DNA of 64,000 nt from Mytilus edulis (Eukaryota): NCBI RefSeq assembly GCF_963676685.1, contig NC_092344.1:42842001-42906000 (forward strand), read 5' to 3'. The notes beneath the pieces are model-generated. The model was not told the DNA's origin and did no database searches. It saw nothing but the letters and a program-made list of their open reading frames with translations. This document shows, piece after piece, positions 25,922-28,337 of the stretch (within the stretch, counting starts at the first letter, position 1; every line of letters starts with the position of its first letter). The position numbers were made by a program, and so were the translations under genes.

Positions 25922-26218
25922 TGTTGTGATTGTGAGTTTGTCTTCATGTCCGTAATGTCGCAAAACAGTGTTAACGTTGTTTCCCGTATTTTTGACGTTG
26001 TGTGATAGTGACGTGAGGGGGAGAGAGGTGTTGCCGGATGGACAAGATGGCTGAATGTTTGTACTATCGGAGTGTATGCCGTTTATTTTGTATTTAAAGT
26101 AACGTCTGTATAGTACATGTCATACATGTAATGTGAATAAATCATCAGGACTGATATTTTCTACAAATATGGTGTTTACTTATAAATTATGAACGCTCGG
26201 AATTTTACGTTTACAACA
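25922..26218 (+). repeat. 5' LTR
   Basis: Direct repeat of 28041-28337; TG...CA ends; AATAAA at ~26136. Confidence 0.95.
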
Positions 26219-26219
26219 T

Positions 26220-26230
26220 TGGTGGCAGCG
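26220..26230 (+). promoter_or_regulatory. Primer-binding site TGGTGGCAGCG (tRNA-Leu type)
   Basis: One base after the LTR; complementary to the tRNA-Leu 3' end CGCUGCCACCA. Confidence 0.85.
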
Positions 26231-26659
26231 AACAGAAACGGATCTACGCAAACAGATGATTTACAGTTTTATACAGACGGAATGCTTTTAAAGAGGGGAG
26301 GAAATATGAAATTAAACAATGAAGGTACTGTAAACAAGTTTATTCGACAATACGATTGTGACCAAATGTATCCATTACAACAGAGGGACGATACGGCACT
26401 GGAATAAGAAGATTCACAATTTAAAACTGATATTGGAATTAAAACAGATTCGACCACATAATTCACAGAGAAGTATTTAATCGGCAAAAGTGGACGGAAA
26501 TTAATTAAACATTTGTGTTCGGTGCTAGCATCAAGGATAAAATGATAATCTAAGGTGCAAATTTGAAAGAAATCAACATTGTCACCCTTATCTATAAATA
26601 ATTGTTGTCTTATGTATGTCTATAACTTATATTTGTCAGCATTTTGATATATATTAACC

Positions 26660-27994
26660 ATGAGCTGGTGTGACTTACCAGAGTTTGACGGTACTGAACC
26701 TTTTGAGGGTTTCTGGATGAAATTTTCTATCTTTGCTGAACGTTTTAAATGGTCATCTAGTGATATGGCTTTTTATTTGGTTACTTCACTGAGAGGTAAA
26801 GCTTTAGAATATGTGTCGTATTTACCACACCGAGATCTTTATAATGTATCTGTTTTGTATTCTGCATTGAAAAGTCGATTTGGTGATATTGAGACTGCTC
26901 AGATTTGTAGAATGAAATTGAGAAATATAACTATGCTTACAAGTGAAAGCGTTCAAGAGTACGTATGTAGAACTGAGATAAATGTTCGGAAATCGTTCCC
27001 TGGTGTGAACGAAGATTTATTAGTGAAGCTGGTTACTGAGTATGCTATATATGGATACCCTAATGGTGACATTGGATATAGAGTTCTGATTAAAGAACCG
27101 TCAACAGTTAGTGAACTTATCAAAGAAATATTGTGGCAGGAACATTGTAGACGATCTTTAAAGTCCGTAGAAAAATCGCGTTGCACTGAAGACAGTAACT
27201 TTGAGAAACATTTTGAAATAGGTAATAAGCGTAATATGAATTTCACAGAAAATGATATTCGGAGGAATAAAGTTTCTGAAAATACTGACGTTGATATGCA
27301 AAATGACATTAGTTTATATTCTAGTAACCAGAAATTGGAAAAAGACAATTATACTGTTGGTAAATTAAATGTACCTAATAATTTCGTTTATCCGAGTGAA
27401 CAGTATGTTTATTACGTCGGTGAATCATATGAATTGAAACATGAGGAACTTTGTGACGTTATTGAGGCAACCGAGGTTGAAGTTGCGAAAGTTTTGGATG
27501 GAGAGATAGCTATCTTGGAGCTTCCGTGCGTTGAAAAGCAGACAATGGTTACCGGTGGAACAGATGTTGTAAGCGTTAGAAAGGTAGAATTGAAATATGA
27601 GGAACTTAATGAAATTGTTGAGGCAACTGAGGCTGCAGTTGCAAAAGTTTTTAAGTTTGGAAGTCCGAACGTTGAACAAAAGACCCTTGGTGAGATAGAA
27701 GTAGTTAGCGTTCGAAAATGGACACACTTTGAGCAAAGTGACGTACATTTTGATACTTCTAAAAACAATGATGAAAACAATTATGACAAACCTAGAGTTT
27801 CAACCGATACTGGATTATCGAGACCAGTATACGGAAAGAACTTCACACATAAAGAACTCATACGCGGAAATGTGTTGACCCAATTCAGAAATAGTAACGT
27901 CTATGAGAACAGTTATGCACGTGATGTATGCATCTGTGGATCGTCAATGTTACCTGAGATGAACTGGAAAACAAAAAAACGCAATTTGTCTTGA
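26660..27994 (+). CDS. Gag-like protein, 444 aa: capsid-like N-terminal ~165 aa and acidic, internally duplicated C-terminal region
   Basis: LPEFDGTEPFEGFW..F, W, LRGKALEY, LKSRFG and ESVQEY resemble Ty3/Gypsy capsid motifs; the ORF lies between PBS and PPT; no CCHC knuckle or protease motif seen. Confidence 0.88.
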   Translation: MSWCDLPEFDGTEPFEGFWMKFSIFAERFKWSSSDMAFYLVTSLRGKALEYVSYLPHRDLYNVSVLYSALKSRFGDIETAQICRMKLRNITMLTSESVQEYVCRTEINVRKSFPGVNEDLLVKLVTEYAIYGYPNGDIGYRVLIKEPSTVSELIKEILWQEHCRRSLKSVEKSRCTEDSNFEKHFEIGNKRNMNFTENDIRRNKVSENTDVDMQNDISLYSSNQKLEKDNYTVGKLNVPNNFVYPSEQYVYYVGESYELKHEELCDVIEATEVEVAKVLDGEIAILELPCVEKQTMVTGGTDVVSVRKVELKYEELNEIVEATEAAVAKVFKFGSPNVEQKTLGEIEVVSVRKWTHFEQSDVHFDTSKNNDENNYDKPRVSTDTGLSRPVYGKNFTHKELIRGNVLTQFRNSNVYENSYARDVCICGSSMLPEMNWKTKKRNLS

Positions 27995-28025
27995 TTAACT
28001 TTTATTTCGAGGACGAAATATTCTT

Positions 28026-28040
28026 GAAAAGAGGGAGTAG
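28026..28040 (+). promoter_or_regulatory. Polypurine tract GAAAAGAGGGAGTAG
   Basis: Abuts the 3' LTR; preceded by TTCGAGGACGAAAT. Confidence 0.85.
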
Positions 28041-28337
28041 TGTTGTGATTGTGAGTTTGTCTTCATGTCCGTAATGTCGCAAAACAGTGTTAACGTTGTT
28101 TCCCGTATTTTTGACGTTGTGTGATAGTGACGTGAGGGGGAGAGAGGTGTTGCCGGATGGACAAGATGGCTGAATGTTTGTACTATCGGAGTGTATGCCG
28201 TTTATTTTGTATTTTATGTAACGTCTGTATAGTACATGTCATACATGTAATGTGAATAAATCATTAGGACTGATATTTTCTACAAATATGGTGTTTACTT
28301 ATAAATTATGAACGCTCGGAATTTTACGTTTACAACA
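28041..28337 (+). repeat. 3' LTR
   Basis: 294/297 identical to the 5' LTR by manual comparison. Confidence 0.95.

What the first reader, a model, noticed from the sequence alone, without database searches (positions are those of the whole stretch)
25922..28337. Young, intact Gag-only LTR retroelement in an animal genome (TR-GAG-like), with no pol
Seen: 297-bp LTRs differing at only 3 positions, CAAG TSD, tRNA-Leu PBS, PPT, and one uninterrupted 444-aa ORF ending ~45 bp before the 3' LTR. No protease, RT, RNase H or integrase remnant is visible in the 1.8-kb interior. Known: Gag-only 'TR-GAG' elements are described from plants, and most non-autonomous LTR elements lose coding capacity. Inference: the similar LTRs and clean TSD mean this short form itself transposed recently using Pol in trans. 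The intact ORF suggests a capsid-encoding satellite that supplies or modifies particles of a helper Gypsy element. This is of added interest if the host is a bivalve, where Steamer-type elements move horizontally.
Basis: partly seen in the sequence, partly recalled or inferred. Interest (0 to 1): 0.85.

Follow-up and report, generated by a model that had tools for sequence, protein, structure and literature searches.

The report
Gag-only LTR retrotransposon in blue mussel
This is a real, recently inserted 2.4-kb LTR retrotransposon of the blue mussel Mytilus edulis that encodes only a capsid-type Gag protein and no enzymes, belongs to a multi-copy family, and looks like an animal counterpart of the plant 'TR-GAG' elements.

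Summary
There are two 297-bp TG..CA LTRs with 3 mismatches, a CAAG target-site duplication, and an 11-nt PBS complementary to the tRNA-Leu(AAG) 3' end. There is also a purine tract, one 444-aa ORF, and no pol relic in any frame.

The host is Mytilus edulis: the neighbouring ORF is 100% identical to an M. edulis TRANK1-like protein.

ORF residues 1-173 fold with high confidence as a two-lobed retroviral-type capsid. The best structural matches are the PNMA2, dArc and Ty3 capsids. Residues 174-444 are an acidic, predicted-disordered, Mytilus-only extension with an internal 52-aa duplication. The CCHC zinc knuckle found in all nearest relatives is absent.

The element is not a one-off deletion. 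Related proteins lie on at least 14 M. edulis contigs and three chromosomes, and in M. galloprovincialis and M. coruscus. At least seven have full-length open frames. One gene model reads through the same gag-stop/PPT junction into the same LTR.

Shared substitutions are about five-fold rarer per site in the capsid domain than in the tail.

Not shown: a helper element, nucleotide-level copy census, dN/dS and expression. A Steamer link is not supported.

Verdict: an animal TR-GAG-like family, a moderately interesting new variant of a known kind.

The parts
25918..25921 (+). 5' copy of the target-site duplication (CAAG)
   Evidence: identical to 28338-28341
25922..26218 (+). 5' LTR, 297 bp, TG..CA. 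It holds a TATA-like TATTTAAA at 26091-26098, AATAAA at 26136-26141 and TATAAA at 26181-26186. These signals were read from the sequence and are untested.
   Evidence: 294/297 identical to the 3' LTR
26220..26230 (+). Primer-binding site, complementary to the 3'-terminal 11 nt (with CCA) of tRNA-Leu(AAG)
   Evidence: for the sequence; for the tRNA-Leu(AAG) 3' fragment in PMC12452697; the Mytilus tRNA was not checked
26219..26659 (+). 441-bp untranslated leader. Its last 44 bp are conserved in other copies, where they appear as an N-terminal extension of P0001 and P0162.
   Evidence: 12/12 residues identical at 26616-26651
26660..27994 (+). Single ORF, 444 aa plus stop: a Gag-like protein
26660..27178 (+). 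Capsid (CA) domain, aa 1-173, two helical lobes
   Evidence: Pfam PNMA 1e-6 and Retrotrans_gag 2e-5, both above the curated cut-offs; AlphaFold2 pLDDT above 90; Foldseek PNMA2 capsid E 5e-6, dArc2 TM 0.75, Ty3, Copia; metavirus ORF1
27179..27991 (+). C-terminal extension, aa 174-444: acidic (pI 5.1), predicted disordered, short basic tail, no CCHC knuckle, no homologue outside Mytilus
27431..27495 (+). First copy of the internal direct repeat (unit spacing 156 nt = 52 aa)
   Evidence: 85% identical to the second copy
27587..27651 (+). Second copy of the internal direct repeat
28026..28037 (+). Polypurine tract (12 purines), 3 nt upstream of the 3' LTR
   Evidence: the same junction is read through in P0164
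28041..28337 (+). 3' LTR, 297 bp
28338..28341 (+). 3' copy of the target-site duplication (CAAG)

Best explanation
The element is one recent insertion of a multi-copy, non-autonomous Ty3/Gypsy-type LTR retrotransposon family of Mytilus. The family encodes only a Gag-like protein.

Shown:
- Complete LTR/PBS/PPT/TSD anatomy.
- A capsid-fold N-terminal domain.
- No protease, RT, RNase H or integrase coding capacity.
- Many related copies in three Mytilus species, including one with the same gag-to-LTR junction.
- Descent from a Gag lineage that had a CCHC nucleocapsid knuckle.

Inferred:
- The 5' LTR drives a genomic RNA that is both the mRNA for the 444-aa protein and the template for reverse transcription.
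- tRNA-Leu primes minus-strand synthesis.
- PR, RT/RNase H and IN come in trans from an unidentified autonomous Gypsy-type element of the same genome. Its integrase made the 4-bp duplication.

The capsid domain seems to be kept by selection in the replicating lineages. It most likely assembles with, or into, the helper's particles so that the element's own RNA is packaged. The zinc knuckle has been replaced by a fast-evolving disordered acidic tail of unknown role.
For: - Anatomy.
- No pol in any frame.
- Capsid fold: pLDDT above 90 for aa 1-173; PNMA2 capsids 8uyo and 8rb3 at E 5e-6 and 1e-5, dArc1 and dArc2, Ty3, Copia; metavirus ORF1.
- Host. The neighbouring 1023-aa ORF is 100% identical to an M. 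edulis TRANK1-like protein on a 126-Mb chromosome.
- Family. Related proteins lie on 14 distinct contigs of one M. edulis assembly, on 2 further RefSeq chromosomes, and in M. galloprovincialis and M. coruscus. Full-length open frames of 430-465 aa occur in P0001, P0002, P0160, P0161, P0162, P0167 and P0168.
- Same short architecture elsewhere. The last 27 residues of P0164 are 93% identical to the translated start of the LTR, reached directly from the gag end.
- Constraint. Substitutions shared by two or more copies are 3.6% per site in CA against 17.7% in the tail (Fisher p = 5e-6). Singletons differ only about two-fold. In one search, P0168 against P0167 is 165/165 in CA and 250/279 in the tail.
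- Derived loss of the knuckle. The family (100/100 support) nests in a 100/100 clade whose five other rows all have CCHC. In one search, 0 of 12 family members have the motif against 96 of 149 relatives.
Against: - No autonomous partner was found. None of the 150 best capsid relatives is longer than 828 aa.
- The protein set is biased towards intact frames, because gene predictors report open frames.
- The CA versus tail contrast could partly reflect recombination between subfamilies.
- A Gag without a nucleocapsid knuckle may be unable to package RNA.
- There are no expression data.
- The PBS match was tested only against a human tRNA-Leu 3' end.
Confidence: 0.78

Rival explanations
1. The Gag frame is a passenger. 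The family is a mobilised deletion derivative whose ORF is open only because the copies are young. The protein plays no part in its spread, as in LARD or TRIM elements that happen to retain gag.
For: - Within-subfamily differences are spread evenly. The window against P0168 is 95.8% in CA and 96.4% in the tail.
- Annotated proteins over-represent intact frames.
- The nucleocapsid knuckle is missing.
Against: - Frames stay open across subfamilies that differ by 10-18% in the tail.
- Shared substitutions are five-fold depleted in the capsid domain.
- The tail is retained in M. coruscus.
- The stem branch of the family is long (0.82), yet the capsid fold is predicted with high confidence.
Confidence: 0.15
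2. The protein acts mainly against other elements or for the host. It would be a Gag-derived interfering or restriction factor of the Fv1, enJS56A1 or Ty1 p22 type, or a PNMA/Arc-like domesticated capsid. The LTR context would then be secondary.
For: - The Pfam PNMA hit is above threshold.
- The best structural match is the PNMA2 capsid.
- Loss of the RNA-binding knuckle resembles PNMA2 and mammalian Arc (my own knowledge).
- RefSeq and UniProt list the copies as ordinary proteins.
Against: - The copy has intact LTRs, PBS, PPT and a fresh target-site duplication.
- There are many dispersed, diverging copies rather than one conserved locus.
- Some copies are fragments absorbed into unrelated gene models, such as JNK and an ion channel.
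Confidence: 0.06
3. This is a one-off internal deletion of a full-length gag-pol element after insertion.
For: No other copy of the LTR or ORF occurs in the 64-kb window.
Against: - At least 14 contigs in M. edulis carry the same protein with the same C-terminus.
- P0164 reads from that C-terminus straight into the same LTR.
- The orphan tail, which contains no pol-derived sequence, is shared by three species.
Confidence: 0.01

Closest known systems
TR-GAG elements of plants and a brown alga (Chaparro et al. 2015, PMC4350172)
   Same: - Under 4 kb, with LTRs, PBS, PPT and TSD.
- A single ORF for Gag and no pol.
- A multi-copy family.
- No obvious autonomous partner; this was also the case for coffee TR-GAG1.
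   Different: - The host is an animal. The authors found no candidate in Drosophila.
- The TSD is 4 bp rather than 5 bp.
- The Gag lacks the nucleocapsid knuckle and carries a lineage-specific disordered tail.
- Transcription has not been shown here.
HeT-A of Drosophila telomeres and CM-gag of Culex (Gag-only retroelements of animals)
   Same: They encode Gag only and depend on a reverse transcriptase supplied in trans. HeT-A is from my own knowledge. CM-gag is known here only from its title, as reference 18 of PMC3286476.
   Different: To my knowledge those are non-LTR-type elements without LTR, PBS or PPT. Neither was compared by sequence here.
PNMA2, Arc/dArc and Ty3 capsids
   Same: The same two-lobed capsid fold: Foldseek E 5e-6 to 4e-2, target-normalised TM 0.56-0.75. 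The Pfam PNMA hit is above its cut-off.
   Different: PNMA and Arc are single-copy domesticated host genes without LTRs. Ty3 Gag has a CCHC knuckle and sits in an autonomous gag-pol element.
Sister Gag lineage in Mytilus and related assemblies (P0008, P0011, P0012, P0013/P0169)
   Same: The capsid domain is 51-57% identical and starts at the N-terminus of the protein. They form a 100/100-supported clade with this family.
   Different: They carry a CX2CX4HX4C knuckle about 50 residues after the capsid domain and lack the long tail. Their genomic context could not be read.
Steamer and Steamer-like elements of bivalves (MchSLE1, PMC11046912)
   Same: LTR retrotransposons of bivalves of the genus Mytilus.
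   Different: MchSLE1 is autonomous at 4758 bp, with one gag-pol ORF, 185-bp LTRs and a tRNA-Asn PBS. [quoted passage not shown] Nothing links it to this element.

Membership tests
TR-GAG (non-autonomous LTR retrotransposon with Gag only) | Two LTRs with PBS, PPT and a target-site duplication | tested here: met
TR-GAG (non-autonomous LTR retrotransposon with Gag only) | Short element (under 4 kb) with a single ORF encoding Gag and no pol domains | tested here: met
   2416 bp
TR-GAG (non-autonomous LTR retrotransposon with Gag only) | Several copies with the same structure and different insertion sites | tested here: inconclusive
   Proteins lie on at least 14 contigs and 3 chromosomes, and one further copy has the same gag-to-LTR junction. 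No DNA of other copies was available, so their lengths and TSDs are unknown.
TR-GAG (non-autonomous LTR retrotransposon with Gag only) | Evidence of activity (transcription, recent insertions) | tested here: inconclusive
   LTRs are 99% identical and the TSD is clean. No transcript data could be consulted.
Ty3/Gypsy (Metaviridae) lineage | Pol domain order PR-RT-RH-IN and RT phylogeny | not testable with these tools
   The element has no pol, and no helper was found.
Ty3/Gypsy (Metaviridae) lineage | Gag with a two-lobed capsid domain of the Ty3/Arc/PNMA type | tested here: met
Ty3/Gypsy (Metaviridae) lineage | Nucleocapsid CCHC zinc knuckle in Gag | tested here: not met
   No motif in the window ORF or in 12 family members, and no relic in other frames. 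It is present in the sister lineage.
PNMA/Arc-type domesticated Gag gene | Host gene at a fixed locus without LTRs, PBS, PPT or TSD | tested here: not met
   Intact LTR anatomy and TSD, and many dispersed copies.
Steamer-like elements | Autonomous gag-pol ORF, tRNA-Asn PBS and roughly 185-bp LTRs, as described for MchSLE1 | tested here: not met
   Comparison of features with PMC11046912. No sequence comparison was possible.
Troyka lineage | Gag zinc finger CX2CX8-10HX4C (PMC12440569) | tested here: not met
   The nearest relatives have CX2CX4HX4C (against the description). The element itself has no finger.

The most novel reading that the evidence does not exclude
Mytilus would harbour a selectively maintained 'capsid satellite'. 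This is an LTR element that keeps only a capsid domain and has swapped the RNA-binding nucleocapsid for a lineage-specific disordered tail. It spreads by entering, or re-programming, the particles of an unrelated helper element.

It would be the first characterised animal TR-GAG. It would also be a natural intermediate between an active retrotransposon Gag and PNMA/Arc-type domesticated capsids.
Probability: 0.3. Interest if true: 0.7.

Novelty: new variant of a known kind. Interest (0 to 1): 0.5.

Why it matters
Gag-only LTR elements are documented in plants and a brown alga, and the authors who defined them found none in Drosophila. My searches of the paper library found no animal LTR example.

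A conserved, multi-copy animal family would show that capsid-only parasitism of retrotransposons is not plant-specific.

It would also give a tractable case for two questions. The first is how a non-autonomous element secures packaging by a helper. The second is how capsid genes lose nucleocapsid function on the way to PNMA/Arc-like host genes.

There is a practical point as well. Its ORFs are annotated as ordinary mussel proteins and are fused into unrelated gene models, including JNK, an ion channel and a hAT-domain protein. This contaminates Mytilus gene sets.

Tried and rejected
The genomic context of every related protein therefore stayed unread.
- Four scans for related DNA returned nothing: metagenome contigs with the protein, metagenome contigs with a five-relative alignment, bacterial/archaeal genome contigs and viral contigs. 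The 97-sequence alignment was too diverse to seed a scan. No collection on hand holds Mytilus DNA.
- A profile search of PDB sequences matched only the zinc-knuckle columns contributed by relatives, not the capsid part. The fold search was needed instead.
- The window has no Rfam family and no tRNA gene.
- Pfam on ten other-frame ORFs of the interior and on the tail alone gave nothing.
- A search with the tail alone found only Mytilus copies.
- Alternative LTR boundaries that include the shared AG at 25920-25921 were rejected, because they give no target-site duplication.
- Troyka and Steamer affiliations were considered and rejected on published features.
Majority states were used only to count substitutions.
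Full report
**Observation.** The region contains a complete LTR-retrotransposon anatomy.
- Two 297-bp direct repeats lie at 25922-26218 and 28041-28337. They begin with TG and end with CA, and differ at three positions: 26096, 26098 and 26146.
- They are flanked by CAAG on both sides, at 25918-25921 and 28338-28341.
- One base after the 5' LTR lies TGGTGGCAGCG (26220-26230). 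This is the exact complement of the last 11 nt, CCA included, of the tRNA-Leu(AAG) 3' fragment printed in PMC12452697. That sequence is human. The mussel tRNA could not be checked, because the window has no tRNA gene.
- A 12-nt purine run (28026-28037) ends 3 nt before the 3' LTR.
- The 1822-bp interior holds a 441-bp leader, one 444-aa ORF (26660-27994) and 46 bp of spacer.

**No pol.**
- Pfam finds only PNMA (E 1e-6, 28.8 bits, cut-off 25) and Retrotrans_gag (E 2e-5, 25.0 bits, cut-off 24.1) in the ORF, both within residues 11-111.
- The C-terminal 274 residues alone match no family even at E 1.
- Ten ORFs of 35 aa or more in the other frames of the interior give nothing meaningful.
- tblastn with ten related Gag proteins aligns only their capsid parts. 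There is no zinc-knuckle or protease relic in any frame.

**Host and setting.**
- The 1023-aa ORF on the minus strand at 28945-32016 is 100% identical to an M. edulis 'TPR and ankyrin repeat-containing protein 1-like' protein, encoded on a 126-Mb chromosome. The window is therefore blue-mussel DNA.
- The element sits about 600 bp beyond that ORF's stop codon, in convergent orientation.
- No other copy of the LTR or ORF is in the window.

**The protein.**
- An AlphaFold2 model built on a 97-sequence alignment gives pLDDT above 90 for residues 1-173, which form ten helices in two lobes. pLDDT is below 50 for nearly all of residues 180-444, apart from one helix at 313-330.
- Foldseek against the PDB puts the human PNMA2 capsid first: 8uyo and 8rb3, E 5e-6 and 1e-5, target-normalised TM 0.65-0.70 over about 178 columns. 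Next come the dArc1 and dArc2 capsids (6taq, TM 0.75), rat and human Arc, the Copia capsid and the Ty3 capsid.
- Against viral models the best match is ORF1 of a fungal metavirus.
- The N-terminal 173 residues are thus a retrotransposon capsid domain.
- The remaining 271 residues are acidic (pI 5.1; 47 D+E against 35 K+R) with a short basic end.
- They contain a 52-aa internal duplication, seen as two 65-nt repeats 85% identical at 27431-27495 and 27587-27651.
- They have no CCHC motif.
- They have no homologue outside Mytilus, either in the whole-protein search or in a search with the tail alone.

**Relatives and direction of change.**
- A search of 1.84 billion representative proteins with the capsid domain gave 1578 hits at E up to 1e-3. 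All of the best 150 are 130-828 aa long.
- Those examined are ordinary Gag proteins: an N-terminal extension, the capsid domain and a CCHC knuckle. 96 of 149 carry the motif.
- Named members are from M. edulis and M. californianus.
- In a maximum-likelihood tree of the capsid domain, the window's family (100/100 support) nests inside a 100/100 clade. The five other rows of that clade (P0008, P0011, P0012, P0013/P0169) are 51-57% identical to the window's capsid domain, and all have a CX2CX4HX4C knuckle about 50 residues after it.
- The knuckle-less, long-tailed protein is therefore the derived state.

**A family, not a one-off deletion.**
- Proteins 83-96% identical to the window's ORF are annotated on 14 different contigs of one M. 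edulis assembly and on two further RefSeq chromosomes. They also occur in M. galloprovincialis (P0005) and, as part of a chimeric model, in M. coruscus (P0010).
- Seven have full-length open frames of 430-465 aa ending at the same C-terminus: P0001, P0002, P0160, P0161, P0162, P0167 and P0168.
- Two details give architecture without DNA.
  - P0164 loses the frame near the end and reads on. Its last 27 residues are 93% identical to the translated first 81 bp of the window's LTR, and are reached directly from the gag end across the purine tract. At least one other copy therefore has no pol between gag and the 3' LTR.
  - P0001 and P0162 begin 14 residues upstream, in sequence identical to the translated end of the window's leader.

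**Constraint.** Only protein sequences were available, so dN/dS could not be computed.
- Across 15 copies, substitutions shared by two or more copies occur at 6 of 165 capsid sites (3.6%) and 48 of 271 tail sites (17.7%; Fisher p = 5e-6). These shared changes arose largely in replicating lineages.
- Singletons, which arose largely after insertion, differ only about two-fold, at 11.5% against 22.1%.
- Between subfamilies, P0168 and P0167 are identical at 165/165 capsid positions but at only 250/279 tail positions. Within a subfamily, the window and P0168 differ evenly, at 95.8% and 96.4%.
- This is the pattern expected if the capsid domain is under purifying selection in the lineages that transpose and decays neutrally afterwards.
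- Caveats: recombination between subfamilies, annotation bias towards open frames, and possible double counting of loci between the two M. edulis assemblies.

**Mechanism (inferred).**
- The element has every cis signal for reverse transcription and integration, and none of the enzymes.
- The clean 4-bp duplication and the 99% identical LTRs indicate integrase-mediated insertion of this short form.
- The LTR divergence is K = 0.010, or two events if the adjacent pair 26096/26098 is counted once.
- At assumed rates of 1-5e-9 per site per year, that is roughly one to five million years. The rate is my assumption, not a measured Mytilus value.
- PR, RT/RNase H and IN must come from another element.
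- The most likely role of the protein is co-assembly with the helper's Gag or Gag-Pol so that its own RNA enters particles. How RNA is bound without a knuckle is unknown; the short basic end and the disordered tail are candidates.
- A passenger ORF and an interfering or host-serving Gag remain as rivals.

**Helper and Steamer.**
- No helper was found.
- No long gag-pol protein with a closely related capsid domain appeared among the 150 best of the 1.84 billion representatives. However, gag and pol are usually separate ORFs in this Gag group, so this result is weak.
- The published Mytilus Steamer-like element differs in PBS (tRNA-Asn), LTR length (185 bp) and Gag content. Nothing here supports a Steamer link or horizontal transfer.

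**Comparison with the known.**
- Structurally the element meets the TR-GAG definition of Chaparro et al., apart from the untested points of copy structure at the DNA level and transcription.
- Those authors found TR-GAGs in angiosperms and Ectocarpus, and none in Drosophila.
- Library searches for Gag-only or non-autonomous LTR elements with gag in bivalves or animals returned no LTR example.
- Animal Gag-only retroelements I know of are HeT-A and, by title, CM-gag of Culex. To my knowledge both are of the non-LTR type.
- Repbase could not be consulted, so an existing unpublished entry cannot be excluded.
- I therefore rate this as a new variant of a known kind.

**Limits.**
- No available collection holds Mytilus DNA.
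- One bench step was referred.

Noticed in passing
window 28945-32016 (-), 44462-45409 (-), 50285-50998 (-), 54369-55031 (-): There is a large TRANK1-like gene on the minus strand. Its 1023-aa ORF is 100% identical to an M. edulis protein (P0176, 1506 aa), and an upstream ORF has a UvrD-helicase match. Relatives at 78-82% identity sit on many short (3.7-3.9 kb) Logan contigs, and one M. galloprovincialis relative carries zf-BED plus UvrD domains. This 'gene' may itself be multi-copy or transposon-related.
   Followed up: partly
window 26096 and 26098 versus 28215 and 28217: Two of the three LTR differences are adjacent. They fall inside the TATA-like TATTTAAA of the 5' LTR, where the 3' LTR reads TATTTTAT. 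I could not tell which state is original, or whether it affects promoter strength.
   Followed up: no
proteins P0007, P0009/P0175, P0010, P0006 (M. edulis and M. coruscus gene models): Fragments of this Gag are fused in public annotations to unrelated genes: a JNK kinase, an ion-transport protein, a hAT-dimerisation protein and another unrelated C-terminus. These look like annotation chimeras or insertions in genes.
   Followed up: partly
protein P0010 (M. coruscus) against window 27395-27811: The M. coruscus version appears to contain only one copy of the 52-aa unit that is duplicated in the M. edulis and M. galloprovincialis copies. The duplication may therefore be younger than the tail itself. 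The caveat is that P0010 is a chimeric gene model.
   Followed up: no
proteins P0013, P0169, P0170-P0174: The sister lineage, a Gag of 299-326 aa with capsid plus CCHC, is present in M. edulis and M. galloprovincialis. It is also present on at least nine 1.2-1.8-kb Logan contigs that hold the complete frame. It could be the gag of the helper, or a second short Gag-only element or transcript.
   Followed up: no
window 26616-26659: A 14-codon upstream ORF ends just before the Gag start codon. In other copies a 2-nt length difference puts it in frame, giving the 461- and 465-aa forms P0001 and P0162.
   Followed up: partly
window 13286-13325: A 40-nt stretch is 80% identical to part of the LTR (E 9e-4 within the window). 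This is probably chance or a very old fragment.
   Followed up: no
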